Below are positions 17,801-41,360 of a stretch of DNA of 64,000 nucleotides, in pieces. The stretch spans positions 26,660,001 to 26,724,000 of the forward strand of contig NC_087252.1 in the NCBI RefSeq assembly GCF_037042905.1, in the 5' to 3' direction. Made by a program: the position numbers and the translations under genes. Source of the DNA: Lytechinus pictus (Eukaryota). Position 1 is the first letter of the stretch, and each line of letters begins with the position of its first letter. The notes under the pieces are model-generated. The model was given only the letters and a program-made list of their open reading frames with translations, was not told the origin of the DNA and ran no database searches.

Positions 17801-20800
17801 GTCAATTCTTAGGTCCATATACATGGCTAAGTTTGCAATCCATCCCATTCTGAGTGCAAACTAGGTCCAGGTGCCCATTTAGGGAGGGAGATGCAATCAA
17901 ATCCAGCTCAAGAATTTGAATACATGCTGATTTTCTAGTAATCAGAAGCGCATATTTGAGACTTTTATGTTGATTTTGCATAAACACAAACTTTCTGATG
18001 ATTCTGCTATGGCCCATGGACAGAACATATTTCAGATAATGGACAATGATGTGACAACTTGGGAGCTCTGGAAGTATTTTGTCATGGGAATAATACGCAA
18101 GGATCTTTCTTTTATGTATTTTATTTTTTGATGCATTTTAAATTTGATTCAGTCAAGAGTTTTAAACTCACGAATTTGATTGCATGCTGACTTTCAAACA
18201 ATCATAAGTGCATATTTGAGACTTTCATGTTGATTTTGCTCGATCACAAACTACATGCAATGGCCCGAGGATAATTCTTGTTTCACATAATGGACAATAT
18301 CGTGATAATTTGCTCTAGATACCGTATATTTTGTTGTGGGAATATATTACAAGGATTTTTTTTCTTTCAACAGTTATTTTGTTATGCATTGTACATTATA
18401 TAGAGTCTGCTCTGTAAGGAATTGTGACATTTGCCTGTTGAACATGTATCTCACACTTCTCTTTTGTCCTATATTATCTCTTCTTGTCCTTTCTTTCTAT
18501 CTCTCTATCTCTCTATGTGTCTCTCCTATTTTATTCTACATCTCCCATCTCCCTTTCTCTCTTTCACTTCTCTACTCTTCTCTTTCTCTTCCCCTTCTCT
18601 CGACCCCTCTCTCTTCTTCTCTCTCATTCATTATACCCCCTCTCCATCTCTCATCCCCTCTCAACCTTTCACCTTTTTCTCATTCTCCGTGTTTCTCTCT
18701 CCAACTCTCTCCATCTCTCTCAATCTCTCAACCTTTCACTTTTCTATCTTTCATTTTCTTCATCTCTCTCCATCTCTCACCTCCTTCCTTCCTCTCTTCC
18801 TCTCCCTCCCCTTCTCCTCTCTCAGGTGATACGATAAAGTTGTCTGGAGTGAGAACGGTGCAAGGAACGACTATCCTGGGAAAACACGATGGACTCCTGC
18901 CAAAAAGGGAAGAAGGGTAAGACGTCACTCACACTACCTGTCTCTCTTAACCTGTCAATGAACCCTTGGGAGCCTTTCATGAACAGTTTTGCAGTGATTG
19001 TCACTGACCAATTTGCTCTTGGCCAATCGGGTTCAAGGATTTTGGTAGCTTTTAACATTTGTTGATGACAAAACTATTCATGAAATGCTCCTCAGTCTTG
19101 ATGAAGAAGCCATTTTTGTGTTATGATTATTCTATGGAGTTATGATTCTTTCTGTTCTAGAATATATCAATTACTATATCTTTCTTCTTGCCTAATTGAT
19201 GTTGTGGTTGGTATTCATTGATTATTCTTGGGATGGGTATTATTATGAGCATCAGCGTATCAACATCACCTTTATAATCATAATCTATAATCATTATTAT
19301 ACAATTCCCAAGAATGTTCTGTATTTCTGATTGGTCCAAATCGGATCACATGATAGTCAGCAAATTGCAATATTGCATCCAAAATGCACTATCCTGTACT
19401 CTGACGTCATACCAAATGTACTATCCTGCACTCTGACGTCATACCAAATGTACTATCCTGCACTCTGACGTCAGAGTGCAGGATAGTGTGAGGTCTGGAA
19501 TTATCTAGAATTTAGATCAAATATATAATTCGGGGCAACTCAGTAACATGGGTGGGGGGGTGTATAAAACAAACAATGCACGCATTCTTGTGCATAGAGG
19601 ACCTAAATAACGAACTCTGTGCTCGACTCGCCAATTGGATATACCGCACTCGGTCCTGCGGACTTCGATGTGGTATATCCATTGGCTCTTCTTGCACATC
19701 GTTCATTAGTTGGCCCTGCATGCACGTGCATTATTTGTATACTACCATCACGATCACTACCATCATCATCATCACCGTTACTACCACCATCATTGTCATC
19801 CTCATGATGATGATGATGATGACGGCGACAACGAGGACGACGATCATCATAATTGTAACTGCAGTAAATGTGTTAATCATAATATGAGTATTATCTATGT
19901 TGCTATCTTGATGACAAAGGTAATCATTATTACATATGATCATTCATCCTATCTGTCTCTGTTTTACTCTCAGACCAAGTGCGTTCACTTTCCCTCCCAC
20001 TGCCGATAGCGTATCTCCCAGTAAGAGACGATCACAATCTCTCAGCTCATTACCCAAGGATGAGAAGGAACCAAGAAGTCCAAGAAAGGTAGGTCAAGCC
20101 CCTACTTTTCAAAGCTTTTTCCTTCTCCCTAAAGGGCTTCAGAAATTTTGTGCTTAGAAAATTTGTTGCACTATCAACTTTGCTCATTCTCCTGAAGACG
20201 ACAAGAACACACTTGTCGAAACATTGAGTTTGGGTGGTCCATTTTAGGACCAACATTTGCCCAAGAAAGATACATGATGTTCCGTGAAACCTATTACACT
20301 ATTCTTCTTCGCCATGGAAACTTTCAGAAGTTACATCTATTAATTGAATTATTATCATAGAGCTGCTCTGCTTGATGATATGATTTTGTTTTTTTATTGT
20401 AATTCAGTTCAAGCCAAATGACACATTGTATTAAACTTAGTAGCAATTTATGGAGCTGTTTTTCATTTTATGAGAGGTATTCTTAACATTTTGTGGGCAA
20501 ATTGCCCATTGCCAATTCATTTGTATAGTGGTTTCCCTTCCTCCTTTTTCTTCACAGAGTCGAGATAAAGACCATGTGAGGCGTCCCATGAATGCTTTCA
20601 TGATCTTCAGCAAGCGACATCGAGCTCTGGTCCACCAGAGACATCCGAACCAAGACAATAGAACAGTCAGCAAGATCTTGGGAGAGTGGTGGTACGCGCT
20701 CAAACCAAAGGAGAAACAAAAATACCATGAACTAGCATTCCAGGTGAGTTAACAGCTCTTGGCTTTCGTTAGCATGTTTATTATAGAGTTGTGGGTTCAA

Positions 20801-23800
20801 GTCCCTGCCTTAAGAAAGGTGGTTAAAACATGGCAATAAAATGGTCAGAAAGATTTTGAGAGATTGGTGGTACCCGCTCAAACCAAAGGAGAAACAAAAA
20901 TACCATGAACTAGCATTCCAGGTGAGTTAACAACTGTTGGCTCTCATTGGCATTTCAATCAGAGAGTCATGGGTTCAAGTCCCAGCTGCAGCATTATTTC
21001 CTTCAGAAAAGATATCAGCTTTGTGGTGCACGTTACCCAGGTGTAGATAATCAGAACCTGGCAGGAATATTCATTTCTTGAAGTTCTTGTGCACCAAGAT
21101 GGTAGTTTGGCTGCAGTCATAGTAATACTGAAAATTAGTAACTTTAGCATTCTGCAGGGAGGGAACAATTTTTTTTGATAATAAGTTTCATCATCGGGGA
21201 GCTTTTGGAACACGGGATGAAATCGTAATAGGACAGAAGTATCAAACAAGATTGAATTGTACATTCCGAGTCCTAAATTCCTTTGGACTGAGCATGTACA
21301 CATTGATACTCTGTGTATTTGTAAAATTATCTTCTGTGACTTATGAATGATTTTGATGAAGTGGGGTAAAATATGTATTTCTGTCTAACAGGTGAAAGAG
21401 GCTCACTTCAAGGCCCATCCTGACTGGAAGTGGTGCAGCCGGGAGCGCAAGAAGTCGGCGAGCGGGGGGTCGGGTTCCGGCGGGCATTCCACCAGCCCCA
21501 TGGCTAGCCCAGGCCCCCTGACTAGCCCCGGTCCACTGACCAGCCCTGGTCCCGTCACCAGCCCTCTCCTCCTCTCCCCATCACATCACATGATGAGCCC
21601 ACTGACCAGCCCGCTGCCACTGATTAGCCCCAGTCAGCTGACTAGCCCAGGATCTCTGCATCGGGCTAGCCCGAGTAGGATGCTGAGTCCTGGAAGGCTT
21701 CGGAGTCCAATCCATGGGGAGATCCATAAAGAGAAGAGAAGACTATTTGAGTCTGATAGTGCAGACTCTGGTCCTAGTCCTGCTTGGGAACCAGGTGAGT
21801 TATAGACAATTATTGACTATTTGAGTCTGATAGTGCGGACTCTGGTCTTAGTCCTGCTTTGGAACCAGGTGAGTTATAGACAATTTTGACTTTTTGAGTC
21901 TGATAGTGCGGACTCTGGTCTTAGTCCTGCTTTGGAACCAGGTGAGTTATAGACAATTTTGACTTTTTGAGTCTGATAGTGCGGACTCTGGTCTTAGTCC
22001 TGCTTTGGAACCAGGTGAGTTATAGACAATTATTGACCATTTGAGTCTGATAGTGCGGACTCTGGTCTTAGTCCTGCTTTGGAACCAGGTGAGTTATAGA
22101 CAATTTTGACTTTTTGAGTCTGATAGTGCGGACTCTGGTCTTAGTCCTGCTTTGGAACCAGGTGAGTTATAGACAATTATTGACTATTTGAGTCTGATAG
22201 TGCGGACTCTGGTCCTAGTCCTGCTTTGGAAACAGGTGAGTTATAGACAATTATTGACTATTTGAGTCTGATAGTGCGGACTCTGGTCTTAGTCCTGCTT
22301 TGGAACCAGGTGAGTTATAGACAATTTTGACTTTTTGAGTCTGATAGTGCGGACTCTGGTCTTAGTCCTGCTTTGGAACCAGGTGAGTTATAGACAATTA
22401 TTGACCATTTGAGTCTGATAGTGCGGACTCTGGTCTTAGTCCTGCTTTGGAACCAGGTGAGTTATAGACAATTTTGACTTTTTGAGTCTGATAGTGCGGA
22501 CTCTGGTCTTAGTCCTGCTTTGGAACCAGGTGAGTTATAGACAATTATTGACTATTTGAGTCTGATAGTGCGGACTCTGGTCTTAGTCCTGCTTTGGAAC
22601 CAGGTGAGTTATAGACAATTATTGACTATTTGAGTCTGATAGTGCGGACTGTGGTCTTAGTCCTGCTTTTGAACCAGGTGAGTTAGAGACAATTATTGAC
22701 CAACGAACGTAGAGGGCAGCAACACACAAGCGTGTTGCTCTAAGGAAGGTCAACTCCGCTCGAATTTTGTGACCACTTTAAAAAATAAGGTGGGGTTTTG
22801 GGAAATTTGTCGAGTTGATTTTTTTTCATTTGTTAATTTTAAATATTTTTTAATGAACAATTATTAGATCGGTTATTCTGCGTATAAATATTAAATATAT
22901 TACTTTCATTTTTAAAGAAAATATTCAGCTTAAATAATCATGATTTTGACATTTTTCCTCATTTTGGAATATTGAGCCTGTGACGAGGATACCTCATATC
23001 TCTTATTTTCTTCTGCTGAATTTCGCTGCACCATGCCACTAATAAATGCATAGACAACCACCGTAATAATCGAGGTCATTTTTCTGGCCTGGGTGCGCCG
23101 AGTCTGGGCCGGTCGCGCAGCTAGCTAGTGACGTTGATGATGCGCTGGGGCTTCAGGCGACTCGTCATAGATCTAGCAACTTAGACAATGACGTCTAATT
23201 TGCCTGGCCTGATTTGAAGTGTAATGGCTTCAGGGCTGATGTTTATCAACGATGATTGTTCAAGGTTAGATTTCAAATTTTAAATGTCATTTGACTTTTA
23301 AGTCTATAAATCTGAAATAAAGGCGCTGTATCCCCGAAATCCGGGTCTAAATTTCAACTCTGAGTCCGAGACCATGGCATGGACGGCGAAAAAACAACCC
23401 ATGCATCGGATGCATTGCATTGGCTGCGCGCTGCGCTGCAGCTGCACTGTGATGATGGGTTCAGCGAAGAGCTCAGAGAAAATAAGGTGGTTATATTCAA
23501 TCCCGAAATGCTTTGCGAGTGGTCACAAAATCGTCTTGATGCAAATCACCTAATACAGCCGTCTGGTGAAATCGCTGATAACAACAATCACCGATTTGGT
23601 AATGATTTTAGTTTCCTGAAACTTATATTTGTAAAGTTTTAAATATCAAAGTATGTTTTTATATGTATGTATATTCTTCAACATATTTTTAAAGTTATCT
23701 TTGATATTGTTGTAGTCATATTCTTTCATATTCGTTTTTTGATCGCTACTAATTTGTTGTTGTATTTGATCGGCATTTGATTTCGTTGGCATGAACAATA

Positions 23801-26800
23801 AAATACGCGCGCAGCTCAGCTGCATGCGCGTATCGAGTTGACCTTCCTTATAGCAACACGCTTGTGTGTTGCTGCCCTCTACGTTCGTTGTTATTGACTA
23901 TTTGAGTCTGATAGTGCAGACTCTGGTCCTAGTCCTGCTTGGGAACCAGGTGAGTTATAGACAATTTTGACTTTTTGAGTCTGATAGTGCGGACTCTGGT
24001 CTTAGTCCTGCTTTGGAACCAGGTGAGTTATAGAAGGTGATTGACCATTCGAGTCTGAGATTGCAGTCCTGCCTGGGGACCTTGGGAGTTATACAATAAT
24101 TGTTTATGCTGAGATAATTGAACTTAAAATAAACTCATATAATTATGATAGATGTGATAGACTGACAACAAGAAGTGAAAAGCTGTTGAGTCCTATTGTG
24201 TGGACTTTGATCTAAGTCCTGCCTGTGTACCTGGTGAGTGCTAAAAGATGAAGCATAATCTTGAACACACTGACAAACATTTGAGAGTACATTGGATGTG
24301 AGAAATGGGGAAATTCAAGAGCAAAGAATAGGATCTTTGTATTGTTGATTAATTAAAAAACTTTCCTTTCTTTTCCCTGTAGTAAAATCTGATTCAGAAA
24401 AGTCTATATCGCTTTGCCCCATCCCTGAGAAGGAGAAAGCGCCCCCTACCTTCAAACAGAGTCCAGTGCCCATGGACCGTTGCCAGTCGGCGGCCATGTT
24501 GCAGCTCCCACCTAAGAAGCGTTCGTTGAGTCTGAGTCATATGATCATGGGAAGTCCGACCAATCTTCACTCTCCAAGGCCGACGCCTCCCACACCCAAA
24601 CAGGTATGAGAGTGTTAGCAGTCCTGATTTACTGGACTTGGTCCTTATCTACATAGAATAGAGTGACATATAGGCAGAACCATAATATTGGAGAAGCCAG
24701 GAAGTTCAAAGTAGAAAGTAGAGCTAAAGAAAAGAGGTCATCAAATTAAGATACATTGCAAAATAAACAACCCAATGCACTTATACATGTACATAATTAT
24801 TCAAGGAAAGGTGGATAAAACTTTTTAAATAGAATCTTAATAGAAATAGAGAGACTTACAGGCAGAACCACATTATTCTGTCGCTGTTGATGTAACTCCC
24901 GTAGGAACTCGGCAAAGAATTTGAAGAAAAAAAGTATTGGGGAAGCCAGGAAGGTGATTATTACCATAACTCTCTTCCAATGATTTGTATAATTCCTTCC
25001 AGACCACACCCAGTCCAGTCAGTACTCCGGGCCGCTCCTCCCCCCTGAAGCCCAAGGTGGGTGATGAGCCACCGTCGACCACCAAACCTCTCGCACCCCT
25101 GACCCCTCTCAAGCAGCACCCCAGACCTCGGCTAGAGTCGGAGGAGACGCTAAGCGATGACGAGAGGATGGTCATCGATGAGGAGGGCGATGACGATGTC
25201 ATCGGTATGTTTTGTTTTCTTGATTAAATTCATGCTTTTTGTAATGACTTTTGAAAGTCTGGGCCCCGTAACACGAAAGTAAGCGATTAATCGCTAATTT
25301 GAAAGAACAATTCTGATTGGTTCCCAGTCAGTCTACTGAACAAAATGCGCGTGCAACAATGATCGTGATAAGCCATTTCATTTAGCGATTAATCGCTAAC
25401 CTTTTTGTTACGGGGCCCTGGGGTTCCTCTTAATAAAAAAAAAAGTGGAAATGCTATTTGCATTCTTGTTAAGTATGTGTGCGCTTGTTAAAGAAAATAA
25501 AGATTAAAGAATAAAAATTAAAAATATAAAGCCCGTGCAACCAATGTTCATTATCTTAAGATGCCTCCTTTCCCTATTGGTTGACAGCTTTTTCATATAA
25601 TAGCACCCGCACTGTGAGTGAGAATAGAAAATTAAAGAAATATTCAACTGAACAATGAAATCCTGAATGCAAGAAAGAGTAAGGATGTCTTATCAGTGAG
25701 GTCCCAGGAAAACTTCTGTTGTAATGTAATTATTTTTTATTTCGTTACAAGCTGCCAATGGAGAAGAGAGAAATATGACACAGAGCAAACGCATTGATCT
25801 GGAATGCAAGGAAAACGTCGAAGTCAGCGACTCAGAGACAGAATCTGAAAACGAGACGACGATCGAGAACAAAGCGTTCCCTCAGCAGCGTTTCTCCCCG
25901 GTCATGAAGCAGCAGCTCCCACCCTCTGACAAACCCTACAGGCCTAAGCCAATCAAGATCAAGCCTGATTCAAACTCACCAATCAGGAACGAGATCGGGG
26001 GAGATCAGACGGACGGAGCATCCTCCAGGCCGGTGACGACGAAGAGTACGTTCCAGCCGACCGGTGCGGTGTTCAAGGCGCATTCTCCGCGTGGGAGGAC
26101 GGATGCTGTCGGGAGCAAAGCAAAAGCTTTCCATGAGTATCATCCGTGGAAAGGAAAAGCAGACTCAAATCAGCAACAGACTTTATCTAAATCTGAACCT
26201 GCAGGACAGGAAAGGACAAATGAATCTAAGGATAATCAGGGTACATCGCATCAGGGATTGGATGATAGAAGCGGGAAGGACCAGAGAGACAGTAGCGTGT
26301 CTGGACAAGAGCCTCAGCATTCCGCACCTCGAGAGGCATTGGTCAGGAACACTCATTCGGTTGGATTACCAACCACCGTGCGCATTGCACCAAGCCCCGG
26401 GGCGGTGATCGTTCCAGGTCATGTGACCATAGCTCCGAACAGGCCGTCGTCTACTCCGGCCAACTTGAACCAGTCATTGCCAACGTCTGTCATTGTTGCG
26501 AGGACATCAGACATACAGAGTAATGTCCAAGGAAGCGGGAACTTGGCGACGTTAGTGCCAACGTCAGTCCAAGCAATTGTTAGCAGAGGATCTACCTTAC
26601 AGCGTGCTTCGAGTATGGAGTTCCAGAGTGGCGTTGTTCAGATCGGGAGACCGGGTGGACTCACTAATGTGACTATTGCTTCGCCGAGTACGCCAACGAC
26701 TCCTAAACCGGGATTTCCAAACATTAAACCTCTCACCACGAATATGATCGCCACGAATGCTGTCAATGTCAATACTATCCAGGGGAAGATACTAGCAACA

Positions 26801-38800: not shown

Positions 38801-41114
38801 GGCATGAGTAAGAATTATCCAGACAAGGTACATGCATACCTTTTAGTAGTTCCTGTCGTGTTCGGGGTGTTTGGATTGTCGGAAGTTGCCTTGTTTTGGT
38901 AATCATGTTAACACCTTGAACAGAATGGTGTGCATTATTTGTTTTATTGAATTTTGATATGGCTCTTTGCATTTTAATGTACTTTCATCTCGGTTATAAT
39001 ATTTTACCCAAGACTGGTCATAGGTGTTATTAAAATGGCATGTTTACACACCATACATGATTGATCACGTGTGAGCTGTCACCCAATCATTGGGATCCTC
39101 TGCACCCGTGGTATATTATTTACTATTGCCTGATGACCTCTGATCCACAGCCGCTTCCACTGCCGCATTCCAGTCCAAACACCAGGACATGTTCCCATCC
39201 AAGAACTGCCTCCAGCTGAAGATCCGTGAAGTCCGCCAGAAGATCATGCAGCAGTCGTGGGATGAGGAAGGCCAGGAAGGAGAACCCGTCGTACCAGGTG
39301 AGGCTTACTAGTCGCAATCAATCTCTTAAAGGTTATCCATGTTTGCCACTCTCCACCCAGGTGTTAAGTGGGCACACAGTAGGATGTGGACGTCAATGTG
39401 GTTCGATTGGCATGTGTGCATCGATAAGTAAACTGTTGCCTGGCCAGGGTACTCTCCAGGGAGTGGAGACGGCGCACTTTATGTGTGGAACAGTGATGGA
39501 TCCTGTGACCGAGGCCCCGTTGCAGTATGGTAACTTTGCTATCCATTGGTGACTTGCATGGAATCCTTGATTCTGATTGGCTGTTGATCAGCATTACCAT
39601 GGTAGCTTCCACGTTATTGCAAAGTTACCTTAATAGTAACTTTTATGCAACAGGGCCTGGGGTATCAATATTTACAATGTAAAACACTCTGAAATGCATC
39701 GTATGAAAGGCAATATAAATGTAACTATTATTATTATCATTCTTATTAAGCTGTGTGTATGTCAAAGCAGATACGAACCAGCCACCTAAATTGCACCACC
39801 TCAAGCACTCAACTACTAAAAAAAACTGGCCCGATTGCTAACCCATAATGCACCATTCTGAGCAATGTAATCTTAAAGTGTATACCTACCTGAGTGATAA
39901 CATGCTAATTCACTTCACTACTTGATACAGTCATACCACAGTGATGATGTTACCAAGTCACAAAACCAGCACTACTCCTTTCGAAATATTTTAGTTTCTT
40001 TATACAAATGAAATTTCGAGGCTTATTTATTATCTCTACGTAGTATTAATAACAATCTCAATATATATATTTATTGAAGGCTAGATTAGATATTTATAAT
40101 ACACAGTCAATGAGAGACCACAAAGAGTGTCCGACAGTTTGCGTTCCCTTCAATCATGGCTTTACACGCAGCTGGTGACCCCTGTGCTAATGGAGATACC
40201 TCAAATTTACCCTGCTTTTACATAATTGGAGTGCGCTGACTGTAACCCATATCAAACGATCAACCTGATTCATAACATCTAGGACCAGGCTAATGATATA
40301 TTCATCTCAGTGGGGCTAATTATTTATAATTATTAATTATTTATTCATGAGGTCATATATTGGGCCCCATGGACCATTCCAGTGAAATTTGGGTTGAGGA
40401 GGTATTTCATCATGCTCTACTGAAATATGGTATAAAAAAATGCTGAAATTAATAAAAAGGGCAAATTGAAGTCACACTTCGGTACTGTATAGCTGTATGA
40501 ATAAGGTATTAAATGTTTGCATTGATGTTTTATTTCTATTCTGACCAGGTACCCCATCCACACCCAAATCTCCAGTACCCGGTAAACTTCACCTGACGTC
40601 CGTCAAGAGCGTTCGCCTCGGTGGTCCCAATCCCACTAGTAAGATGGCCCTGTCGTCCACCCCACTCAGCAGCGCCAACTCGGCCCTCACCGCCAAGTTC
40701 ACCTTGACTCCAGCTCCGCCCCCTTCCCCCATGGCGAGAGGGGGTTCCCCTAACCCCCAGGGGACACCAACCATGACCAAGTTCCACTACTCCCCGCACA
40801 TGAGCCAGCAGCCGAAGCCCATGTCACCGTTGGTCAAACTCTCCAACCCCCAGCCAGGTTCTCCGGCCCTCCACCCCATCTCGGTCGCCTCCCCTGCTCT
40901 GCAGCATGGCCAGACCATCTTCGTCTATCCTGCCAGCCCCGGCGTGAACCAGTTCCAGCCGGCCCAAGCCGCCCAGGGCAGGCCTCCTACCTCAGTTGTA
41001 CAAGGAGTGGCACCCCCCGGTGCAGCCAATTCGGGGGTGACACATATAGCTCTTCATGGGCAACCTCATATCAATCTGCAAGGGAGTGGGAGTGGGAACC
41101 AGACACCAAAATGA
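11622..41114 (+). CDS. cic: capicua (CIC) HMG-box transcriptional repressor, long-isoform type, 5'-partial; 21 coding exons in window
   Basis: Manual GT-AG reconstruction gives one continuous frame (7259 nt plus 1 nt from an upstream exon = 2420 codons incl. stop). Diagnostic motifs: [89 protein letters not shown]...[14 protein letters not shown]. Confidence 0.97.
12696..12967. mobile_element. Harbinger-like MITE
   Basis: TIR ggccccgttgtacaaagagttacgattgatcc / ggatcaatcgtaactctttgtacagcggggcc. Confidence 0.75.
13080..13342 (-). mobile_element. tRNA-derived SINE (internally deleted)
   Basis: Minus-strand A box tggtctaatgg, B box gttcgattcc; body matches the SINE at 56487. Confidence 0.75.
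15430..15598. mobile_element. Short palindromic Harbinger-like MITE
   Basis: Near-perfect hairpin tttcataaagctgtt...taagttaagagcgac; another copy at about 35971-36152. Confidence 0.75.
15674..16475 (+). CDS. cic: cic exon 2 (S/Q-rich)
   Basis: tttcag| and g|gtaagt; within ORF 15644..16510; [15 protein letters not shown] resembles CIC-L. Confidence 0.9.
17044..17466. mobile_element. hAT-like MITE with 6-bp TSD
   Basis: TIR cagacctgccaacc / ggttggcatgtctg; TSD TTAAAG. Confidence 0.75.
17531..17689 (+). CDS. cic: cic exon 3, ATXN1-binding motif
   Basis: ctgtag| and g|gtgagt; [13 protein letters not shown]. Confidence 0.93.
18470..18825 (+). repeat. CT-rich polypyrimidine low-complexity tract
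   Basis: About 350 nt of mostly C/T ending at the exon 4 acceptor. Confidence 0.9.
18826..18916 (+). CDS. cic: cic exon 4
   Basis: Long pyrimidine tract plus ctcag|, gg|gtaaga; bridges phase 1 to phase 2 as required by the neighbouring exons. Confidence 0.8.
19974..20088 (+). CDS. cic: cic exon 5, RSK/14-3-3 motif
   Basis: ctcag| and aag|gtaggt; [15 protein letters not shown]. Confidence 0.92.
20558..20743 (+). CDS. cic: cic exon 6, HMG box (main part)
   Basis: tcacag| and cag|gtgagt; CIC-type HMG box. Confidence 0.97.
20826..20983 (+). repeat. Diverged tandem duplicate of exon 6 3' end plus donor
   Basis: Copy offset by 178 nt; cgctcaaaccaaaggagaaacaaaaataccatgaactagcattccaggtgagttaaca identical to the real junction. 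Confidence 0.93.
21392..21794 (+). CDS. cic: cic exon 7, HMG box end plus Ser-Pro repeat region
   Basis: taacag| and g|gtgagt; [15 protein letters not shown]. Confidence 0.95.
21741..24033 (+). repeat. 73/74-bp minisatellite made of exon 7 end plus splice donor, 15 copies, interrupted by a TIR element
   Basis: GT donors at 21795, 21869, 21942, 22015, 22089, 22162, 22236, 22310, 22383, 22457, 22530, 22604, 22678, 23950, 24023. Confidence 0.96.
22701..23890. mobile_element. Non-autonomous DNA transposon (P- or hAT-like), 1190 bp
   Basis: 56-bp TIR caacgaacgtagagggcagcaacac...gtcaactc with one mismatch; 8-bp TSD TTATTGAC. Confidence 0.92.
24383..24603 (+). CDS. cic: cic exon 8
   Basis: ctgtag| and cag|gtatga; open frame, phase 1 to 0. 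Confidence 0.85.
25003..25204 (+). CDS. cic: cic exon 9
   Basis: ttccag| and g|gtatgt; [17 protein letters not shown] conserved CIC motif. Confidence 0.92.
25752..27329 (+). CDS. cic: cic exon 10 (1578 nt)
   Basis: tacaag| and g|gtgaga; [15 protein letters not shown] conserved motif; ORF 25775..27340. Confidence 0.9.
27998..28187 (+). CDS. cic: cic exon 11
   Basis: ttgaag| acceptor; weak ag|gtcatt donor chosen on phase. Confidence 0.7.
28747..28904 (+). CDS. cic: cic exon 12
   Basis: tctcag| and g|gtaggt; phase consistent. Confidence 0.78.
29523..29969 (+). CDS. cic: cic exon 13
   Basis: ttatag| and t|gtaaga; P/T/S-rich open frame. Confidence 0.82.
30462..31261 (+). CDS. cic: cic exon 14, ERK-docking-like motif
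   Basis: ttacag| and agg|gtaaga; [13 protein letters not shown] resembles vertebrate KVKAAIASIPV. Confidence 0.9.
31925..32171 (+). CDS. cic: cic exon 15
   Basis: tcacag| and g|gttagt; open frame. Confidence 0.83.
33916..34966. mobile_element. pogo/Tc1-mariner-like non-autonomous element nested in a Kolobok-like repeat
   Basis: TA TSD; TIR ccgtaagtaacggactataaaccgcacc; flanks match the element at 37134-37527 in reverse. Confidence 0.85.
35048..35312 (+). CDS. cic: cic exon 16
   Basis: caacag| and aa|gtaagt; ends [10 protein letters not shown]. Confidence 0.87.
35795..35940 (+). CDS. cic: cic exon 17, conserved block with basic NLS-like motif
   Basis: atccag| and a|gtaaga; [21 protein letters not shown]...SYRRKRK. 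Confidence 0.93.
37134..37527. mobile_element. Kolobok-like non-autonomous element
   Basis: TTAA flanks; homologous to about 33640-33915 plus 34967-35025 on the opposite strand. Confidence 0.65.
37700..37879 (+). CDS. cic: cic exon 18
   Basis: ttccag| and g|gtatga; DPTSP...[12 protein letters not shown]...VFKF. Confidence 0.9.
38044..38202. mobile_element. hAT-like MITE with 6-bp TSD
   Basis: TIR caggcctgccaa / ttggcaggcctg; TSD AATTGA. Confidence 0.75.
38337..38477 (+). CDS. cic: cic exon 19, C1 domain N-half
   Basis: tattag| and g|gtaaat; [26 protein letters not shown]. Confidence 0.94.
39151..39297 (+). CDS. cic: cic exon 20, C1 domain C-half
   Basis: ccacag| and g|gtgagg; [31 protein letters not shown]. 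Confidence 0.95.
40549..41114 (+). CDS. cic: cic terminal coding exon 21
   Basis: gaccag| acceptor, in frame with ORF 40644..41114, TGA at 41112-41114. Confidence 0.87.
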
Positions 41115-41360
41115 AAGCCCTCCTACCATGGCCATGCAAGGAGTAGCACCCCCGGAGCAGCCAGTTCGGGGATGACCCATATAGCTCTTCATGGGCAACC
41201 GAATATCAATCTGCAAGGGAGTGGGAGTGTTAACCAGACACCAAAATGAAAGCCCTTCTACCATTGTCATGCAAGGAGGAGCACCCCCGGTGCAGCCAGT
41301 TCAGGGGTGACATGTATAGCTGGGCAACCACCTATCAATCTGCAAGGGACTTCAAAATGA
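40983..41360 (+). repeat. Triplicated cic C-terminus plus stop (period 135 then 111 nt)
   Basis: Three copies ending ...caaaaTGA at 41114, 41249, 41360. Confidence 0.93.

What the first reader, a model, noticed from the sequence alone, without database searches (positions are those of the whole stretch)
21741..24240. Array of 15 intact splice donors built from the end of the HMG-flanking exon
Seen: the last 54 nt of exon 7 plus GTGAGTTATAGACAATT(A)TT is repeated as 73/74-bp units. There are 13 copies including the real one, then a transposon, 2 more copies and 2 decayed copies (last at about 24200-24240). All 15 keep CAG|GTGAGT. Use of any downstream donor reads into an in-frame TAG at 21803-21805 (..WEPGEL*). 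Established: CIC needs C1 with the HMG box for DNA binding, and such transcripts are typical NMD targets. Inference: the array could act as a copy-number-dependent set of decoy donors or U1 sites that tunes cic dosage or yields a C1-less protein. It may equally be a recent neutral minisatellite.
Basis: partly seen in the sequence, partly recalled or inferred. Interest (0 to 1): 0.72.

Follow-up and report, generated by a model that had tools for sequence, protein, structure and literature searches.

The report
Splice-donor minisatellite in capicua intron
The end of one capicua exon and its splice-donor signal really are copied 15 times in tandem at the start of the next intron, but this is a known, usually harmless kind of repeat in which the cell uses the first, genuine donor.

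Summary
There are 13 units of 73/74 bp (21741-22700), a 1,190-bp transposon, 2 more units and 2 decayed units. All 15 intact units keep CAG|GTGAGT. Use of any downstream donor would read into the in-frame TAG at 21803-21805.

The evidence favours a neutral, fast-evolving minisatellite over a regulatory device.
- **Copy number varies.** A second copy of the whole cic locus, 2.3 Mb away and about 96% identical (probably the other haplotype), has only 5 units and no transposon.
- **The expansion is recent.** About 10 units were added, including a 5-unit block copied at 99.7% identity.
- **The donors are not specially conserved.** Their invariance is what chance would give (P=0.18), and one old copy has lost its donor.
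- **RNA shows only the canonical junction.** Contigs give 21794→24383 at depth 51, against exon depth of about 58-65. Intron 7 is no more retained than intron 8.

The literature already describes this class in human F7, IFI6, CBS, LMNB2 and PDGF, normally with only the most upstream donor used. This scan had already found two similar arrays elsewhere in this genome (a FARP gene and a dioxygenase gene).

Minor use of donor 2, and NMD-masked isoforms, could not be excluded. Verdict: a new member of a known kind, of low interest.

The parts
21392..21794 (+). cic coding exon: the last part of the HMG box, then a Ser/Pro-rich tail. Its authentic donor CAG|GTGAGT is at 21794/21795.
   Evidence: Translation. 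The preceding exon, 20558-20743, is an HMG box (Pfam) that best matches PDB 'Protein capicua homolog' at E=3e-37. RNA contig joints 20743/21392 and 21794/24383 are.
21741..22700 (+). Minisatellite, units 1-13 (73/74 bp). Unit 1 spans the exon-intron boundary; units 2-13 carry 12 identical pseudo-donors.
   Evidence: TRF, donor list, unit alignment. There is a higher-order 368-bp (5-unit) period: 21886-22185 and 22254-22553 are about 99.7% identical.
21803..21805 (+). In-frame TAG, 9 nt into the intron. It would end the reading frame of any transcript spliced from a downstream donor.
   Evidence: Read-through translation ...WEPGEL*.
22701..23890 (+). Young non-autonomous DNA transposon of hAT type, by its 8-bp target duplication, inserted at a unit boundary.
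   Evidence: 56-nt inverted ends, 98% complementary. At least 40 full-length copies at 98-99% identity and 769 first-look candidates in the genome. 8-bp duplications in 6 of 6 copies checked, and no ORF over 92 aa. Absent from the second cic locus.
23891..24034 (+). Units 14 and 15, with 2 more intact CAG|GTGAGT donors. The exon-derived 54 nt of unit 14 are identical to those of unit 1.
24051..24101 (+). Decayed unit; the donor is lost (TTG|GGAGT).
   Evidence: Local alignment z = 8.4. Present in both locus copies.
24186..24239 (+). Decayed unit, about 81% identical to the unit, which still has CTG|GTGAGT at 24233/24234.
   Evidence: Local alignment z = 14.5. Present in both locus copies.
24383..24603 (+). 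Next cic exon; its acceptor is the one used with donor 21794.
   Evidence: Joint 21794/24383, GT..AG, at depth 50.9 in X1 contigs, plus one raw read in X22. Frame checked.

Best explanation
This is a boundary-spanning intronic minisatellite (VNTR). A tandem duplication that included the last 54 nt of a capicua exon and the first 20 nt of its intron was later amplified by unequal exchange or replication slippage. The result is 14 extra perfect splice donors at the start of the intron. The splicing machinery pairs the first donor it meets after the exon, the authentic one, with the acceptor at 24383. The pseudo-donors stay silent or nearly so, and the whole array is removed as ordinary intron. 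The array has no function of its own and changes quickly in copy number. Shown here: the anatomy, the different copy number in the second locus copy, the recent expansion, the transposon insertion, the decay of old copies, and the canonical junction in RNA. Inferred: that the first donor is used exclusively, and that the array is selectively neutral.
For: (1) The second locus copy has 5 units, the window has 15, and both share the same 2 decayed units. Unit correspondences are w1=p1, w13~p3, w14~p4 and w15~p5, so about 10 units were added on one lineage after about 4% divergence. (2) A 5-unit block is duplicated at about 99.7% identity. (3) A transposon from a family whose copies are 98-99% identical sits inside the array in one copy only. 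(4) The donor 9-mer has no variable column, but only 12 of 74 columns vary, so P(no variable column) = 0.18. An old copy has lost its GT. (5) In the X1 RNA contigs the only joint at this intron is 21794/24383, at depth 50.9 against exon depths of 58.3 and 65.2. A contig specific to unit 3 of the 5-unit array has depth 9, which is the intron baseline (8.8 in intron 8, 10.5 at the end of intron 7). So donors 4-5 are not used measurably, and intron 7 is not specially retained. (6) The unit occurs only at these two loci, so it arose locally. (7) Precedent: F7 IVS7, LMNB2 and PDGF use only the first donor, while IFI6 and CBS also use the first two pseudo-sites (PMC1557585). (8) The same gene has a second, older junction duplication at the HMG exon.
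Against: The RNA evidence is thin. The junction contig has only 28 nt on its shorter side, so it cannot tell donor 1 from donors 2 and 4 of the 5-unit array. The raw runs gave a single junction read. Contigs drop rare isoforms, and NMD would hide transcripts carrying the premature stop. All pseudo-donors match the U1 consensus perfectly, and in the F7 experiments only perfect-consensus pseudo-sites could draw some splicing. All 11 diagnostic letters in X1 are of the 5-unit type. If the two loci are true paralogs rather than alleles, the 15-unit copy would be silent in that sample.
Confidence: 0.8

Rival explanations
1. The array is a copy-number-dependent decoy. Downstream donors or bound U1 divert part of the pre-mRNA into transcripts with a premature stop, which NMD degrades or which give a C1-less protein. 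This would tune cic dosage.
For: There are 15 perfect U1-consensus donors, and every downstream donor reads into TAG 21803-21805. IFI6 and CBS do use their first two pseudo-sites. Only letters of the 5-unit type are seen in X1 RNA. NMD could hide such isoforms.
Against: Copy number is 5 versus 15 between two intact, constrained locus copies: 31 synonymous against 14 non-synonymous differences. A transposon sits in the array. The donors are no more conserved than the rest of the unit, P=0.18, and old copies decay. No downstream-donor joint is seen, and array depth equals the intron baseline. In F7, identical pseudo-sites do not compete with the first site.
Confidence: 0.07
2. The array, or its length, is an assembly artefact: a mis-assembled repeat.
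For: Repeats of about 1 kb at 96-100% identity are hard to assemble. No genomic long reads could be laid. The assembly appears to keep both haplotypes in this region.
Against: The array was assembled independently in two locus copies with different, internally consistent unit variants. A transposon with clean ends and an exact 8-bp duplication sits inside it. RNA contigs from another sample carry unit variants of the 5-unit type and the sequence running from the array end into the next exon. There are no Ns.
Confidence: 0.05
3. The window's cic copy is a true, recently duplicated paralog that is silent or degraded because of the long array and the transposon, while the 5-unit copy does the work.
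For: All 11 variant letters in X1, exonic and intronic, are of the 5-unit-locus type. The duplicated block is large, at least 430 kb, and only 84-90% identical in places.
Against: Coding regions are about 99% identical, with roughly 0.45 non-synonymous differences per synonymous one and one in-frame indel, so both lineages are constrained. Neighbouring probes have their second copies at inconsistent places and orientations, or none at all, as retained haplotigs would. An animal that lacks this haplotype explains X1 equally well.
Confidence: 0.06

Closest known systems
Human F7 intron 7 minisatellite (37-bp VNTR, 5-9 repeats; Borensztajn et al. 2006, PMC1557585)
   Same: The first monomer spans the exon-intron boundary, so the authentic donor is followed by identical pseudo-donors. 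Copy number is variable. Only the most upstream donor is normally used.
   Different: Here the unit is 73/74 bp and takes 54 nt of exon, against 4 nt in F7. The donors are a perfect U1 match, whereas F7's donor is weak (UGG/gugggu). There are up to 15 copies, with a transposon inside. The species is a sea urchin. Donor choice has not been tested by experiment here.
Other boundary-spanning minisatellites listed in that paper: IFI6 (6-16) intron 2 with 25 pseudo-sites, CBS intron 13 with 15-20 repeats, LMNB2 with 10-15 repeats of 100 bp, PDGF intron 4 with 16-18 repeats of 81 bp
   Same: Similar unit sizes and copy numbers, with the donor repeated down the intron. LMNB2 and PDGF use only the authentic donor.
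   Different: IFI6 and CBS also use the first two pseudo-sites all the time. Whether that happens here is unresolved, and here any such use would meet a stop codon at once.
Decoy splice sites and decoy exons that promote intron retention (for example SF3B1 intron 4, PMC6097662), and pseudo-5' splice sites that bind U1
   Same: Intronic sequences able to bind U1 without productive splicing.
   Different: Decoy exons have both a 3' and a 5' splice site and are conserved. These units have no credible acceptor: upstream pyrimidine content is 0.65 or less. They are not conserved even between the two locus copies. Intron 7 is no more retained than intron 8.

Membership tests
Boundary-spanning intronic minisatellite with repeated pseudo-donors (F7 IVS7 type) | Head-to-tail array whose first monomer contains the exon-intron junction | tested here: met
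   Unit 1 is 21741-21814 and the exon ends at 21794. The junction is confirmed by the RNA joint.
Boundary-spanning intronic minisatellite with repeated pseudo-donors (F7 IVS7 type) | The authentic donor sequence is repeated unchanged downstream | tested here: met
   15 copies of CAGGTGAGT between 21792 and 24020.
Boundary-spanning intronic minisatellite with repeated pseudo-donors (F7 IVS7 type) | Variable copy number (VNTR behaviour) | tested here: met
   5 units at the second locus copy against 15 here, with the flanks and decayed units shared. Whether the two are alleles or paralogs is only inferred.
Boundary-spanning intronic minisatellite with repeated pseudo-donors (F7 IVS7 type) | Only, or mainly, the most upstream donor is used | tested here: inconclusive
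   The only joint seen is 21794/24383, at depth 50.9, and donors 4-5 are at the intron baseline. A 28-nt side cannot exclude donor 2, and the raw reads are too few.
Regulated unproductive splicing (poison isoform plus NMD) or decoy donors | The isoform with the premature stop is detectably produced | tested here: inconclusive
   None is seen in X1 contigs or in three raw RNA runs, but coverage is low and NMD was not blocked.
Regulated unproductive splicing (poison isoform plus NMD) or decoy donors | The alternative sites are conserved beyond the neutral expectation | tested here: not met
   Donor invariance has P=0.18. One old copy lost its GT. Copy number differs threefold between locus copies. 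A comparison across species was not possible.
Decoy exon that promotes intron retention | A cryptic exon with both splice sites, and raised retention of the host intron | tested here: not met
   No acceptor-like site in the unit. Intron 7 depth is 10.5 against 8.8 for intron 8, with exons at about 60.
Capicua (CIC) gene | HMG box of the CIC type | tested here: met
   Pfam HMG_box at E=1.8e-16. The best PDB matches are 7m5w and 6jrp, 'Protein capicua homolog', at E=3e-37 and 1e-35, against 8e-21 for the next family. The C1 domain was not located.

The most novel reading that the evidence does not exclude
The long (15-unit plus transposon) form lowers productive cic output. It would do so either by diverting some splicing to pseudo-donors that meet the TAG and trigger NMD, or by loading the intron start with U1. 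Array length would then act as a heritable dosage variant of a key RTK/ERK-pathway repressor in sea-urchin populations. Seeing only letters of the 5-unit type in one RNA sample would be the first hint.
Probability: 0.06. Interest if true: 0.6.

Novelty: new member of a known kind. Interest (0 to 1): 0.15.

Why it matters
It matters little as a discovery, because minisatellites that repeat an exon's donor down the intron are documented and are usually harmless. This one has modest value as a natural test case for 5' splice-site choice. It offers 15 perfect-consensus donors, two natural lengths (5 and 15), and a frame in which any mistake is immediately visible as a premature stop. Together with two similar arrays already noted in this genome and a second junction duplication in the same gene, it suggests such duplications are common in sea-urchin genomes. 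Gene annotators should expect them.

Tried and rejected
- **Dispersed satellite or transposon origin of the unit: rejected.** The unit matches only the two cic loci.
- **Selection on the donors: rejected.** A hypergeometric test gives P=0.18.
- **Units as small exons: rejected.** The unit has no acceptor-like site, and 73/74 nt is not a multiple of three.
- **Comparison across species: not achieved.** The exon-7 peptide search found only distant HMG fragments of 11-36% coverage.
- **Raw RNA runs X21-X23:** almost no cic coverage at the roughly 6% sampled. Their reads lie mostly on the transposon and come from other copies.
- **Allele or paralog:** probes at 26.0, 26.3, 26.9 and 27.5 Mb gave a mixed picture. 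I favour alleles, but this is not proven.
- **Steps not taken:** I did not run the large representative-protein search, because the claim does not rest on an absence of relatives.
Full report
**What is there.** The window is G000:C8:26660001-26724000 and carries a capicua (cic) gene on the + strand.
- Exon 20558-20743 is an HMG box (Pfam, E=1.8e-16). Its best solved relatives are 'Protein capicua homolog' 7m5w and 6jrp (E=3e-37 and 1e-35), far ahead of BBX and the SOX proteins.
- The next exon, 21392-21794, finishes the HMG box and continues into a Ser/Pro-rich tail. Only its HMG part has relatives in the protein collection.
- RNA contigs of run X1 show the joints 20743/21392 and 21794/24383, both GT..AG.

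**The array.**
- TRF reports 13.0 copies of a 74-bp unit at 21741-22700 (96% matches, score 1780) and 1.9 more at 23894-24034. No other tandem repeat in the 64-kb window comes near that score.
- The unit is the last 54 nt of the exon plus 19/20 nt of intron. CAGGTGAGT occurs 15 times in the array.
- Two further copies are decayed but statistically clear, with z = 8.4 and 14.5 against shuffles. The first has lost its GT. The second keeps CTG|GTGAGT at 24233/24234.
- Reading through the authentic donor gives ...WEPGEL and then TAG at 21803-21805. Any transcript spliced from a later donor would therefore carry an early stop.

**The insertion.** The stretch 22701-23890 has 56-nt inverted ends and no ORF above 92 aa. 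All six copies examined have an 8-bp target duplication, here TTATTGAC. The genome holds at least 40 full-length copies at 98-99% identity and 769 first-look candidates. It is a very young non-autonomous element of hAT type. RNA reads on it run off into many different flanks, so they come from other copies.

**A second copy of the locus.**
- The unit occurs elsewhere only at C8:24.38 Mb. That place belongs to a colinear second copy of the whole cic region, about 96% identical over at least 85 kb and reaching at least 430 kb.
- Its array has 5 intact units, the same two decayed units, and no transposon.
- Unit variants pair up as w1=p1, w13~p3, w14~p4 and w15~p5. The ancestral array therefore had about 5 units, and about 10 were added in the window's copy. 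Part of that gain came from copying a 5-unit (368-bp) block, now about 99.7% identical. The transposon then landed between the units corresponding to p3 and p4.
- Coding parts of the two copies are about 99% identical. They differ at 31 synonymous and 14 non-synonymous sites and by one in-frame indel, so both are constrained.
- Neighbouring probes have second copies at inconsistent places: 26.30 Mb matches 23.97 Mb on the + strand, 26.90 Mb matches 39.82 Mb on the - strand, and 26.0 Mb has none.
- All 11 variant letters in run X1 are of the 5-unit type.
- Taken together I think the two copies are most likely the two haplotypes of a very heterozygous animal, both kept in the assembly. That makes 5 and 15 allelic lengths. 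I put this at about 75%; a young segmental duplication is not excluded.

**Is there any sign of function?** I found none.
- The donor 9-mer is invariant across 20 units. But only 12 of the 74 columns vary, so the chance of no variable column among nine is 0.18. The intact donors reflect youth, not selection. Older copies decay, and one has lost its donor.
- In X1, exon depths are 58.3 and 65.2, and the canonical junction contig has depth 50.9.
- The contig running from the array end into the next exon has depth 10.5, and intron 8 has 8.8.
- A contig specific to unit 3 of the 5-unit array has depth 9. So donors 4-5 are not used measurably, and intron 7 is no more retained than its neighbour.
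- No joint from any other donor was listed.

**Limits of the RNA evidence.**
- The junction contig has only 28 nt on its shorter side. That cannot separate donor 1 from donors 2 and 4 of the 5-unit array, which share those letters.
- The three raw rRNA-depleted runs gave one junction read in all.
- Contigs drop rare forms.
- NMD would remove exactly the transcripts in question.

**What may favour the first donor.** The authentic donor is preceded, just upstream of the repeated part, by a purine-rich stretch (AAAGAGAAGAGAAGA; 73% purine over 21711-21740). The pseudo-donors do not have this stretch. That it acts as an enhancer is my inference only.

**Comparison with what is known.** Borensztajn et al. 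2006 (PMC1557585) describe exactly this architecture.
- Human F7 intron 7 has a 37-bp minisatellite of 5-9 repeats whose first monomer spans the exon 7/intron 7 boundary. The identical pseudo-sites are functional but silent, because the most upstream site is chosen.
- The same paper lists LMNB2 and PDGF (authentic donor only), and IFI6 (6-16) and CBS (the first two pseudo-sites are also used).
- Only pseudo-sites with a perfect consensus could draw some splicing in the F7 constructs. Here all sites, including the authentic one, are perfect.
- Hodson et al. 2012 (PMC3413131) show that surplus U1 on alternative strong sites is removed when complex A forms.
- The requirement of C1 together with the HMG box for CIC DNA binding is established (PMC5344332). 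A truncated product would therefore lack that activity, but nothing suggests such a product is made.

**Earlier notes of this scan (unchecked by me).** They report two other donor-repeating minisatellites in this same genome, in a FARP gene and in a dioxygenase gene, both judged ordinary. They name the genome as the painted sea urchin, Lytechinus pictus. In the same cic gene I also found an older two-copy duplication of the HMG exon end with its donor. Such junction duplications seem frequent here.

**Verdict.** The feature is real and well described, and it is a new member of a known kind. The most likely account is a neutral, rapidly changing VNTR in which the first donor is used (confidence 0.8). 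A dosage-tuning role remains possible at a few per cent and needs junction counts under NMD block and allele-specific expression.

Noticed in passing
window 20656-20808 and 20834-20986: A second boundary-spanning duplication in the same gene. The last 88 nt of the HMG-box exon plus 65 nt of intron are repeated once, 178 bp downstream, at 86% identity. The copy keeps CAG|GTGAGTTAA. It is also present in the second locus copy, so it is older than the split between the two.
   Followed up: partly
G000:C8:23.97-24.44 Mb versus 26.30-26.73 Mb (loci L011-L020): The whole cic region exists twice on the same chromosome, 2.3 Mb apart in the same orientation. Identity is about 96% on average and 84-98% locally. 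A probe at 26.90 Mb has its twin at 39.82 Mb on the opposite strand. This is probably an uncollapsed haplotype in the assembly, and annotation and copy counts in this region should be treated with care.
   Followed up: partly
window 22701-23890; L026-L030: A very young non-autonomous transposon family of 1185-1190 bp with 56-nt inverted ends and 8-bp target duplications. There are at least 40 near-identical copies genome-wide, and they are transcribed from many sites. X1 contigs also show internally deleted derivatives (joint 22727/23867).
   Followed up: partly
window 41001-41321: A 135-bp tandem repeat (2.4 copies, 89% matches) overlaps the end of another cic open reading frame (40644-41114). 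It may be a third duplication at a coding-segment end, but the exon boundary there was not determined.
   Followed up: no
window 21495-21658: Coding 18-bp (6-residue) periodicity in the exon tail, with motifs such as SPGPLT and SPLPLI repeated about seven times. These are Ser/Thr-Pro sites of the kind ERK phosphorylates in CIC; that link is only a thought.
   Followed up: no
window 20780-20810 and 20960-20990: The duplicated intron part contains a tRNA-like GGGTTCAAGTCCC motif, which may be a SINE fragment.
   Followed up: no
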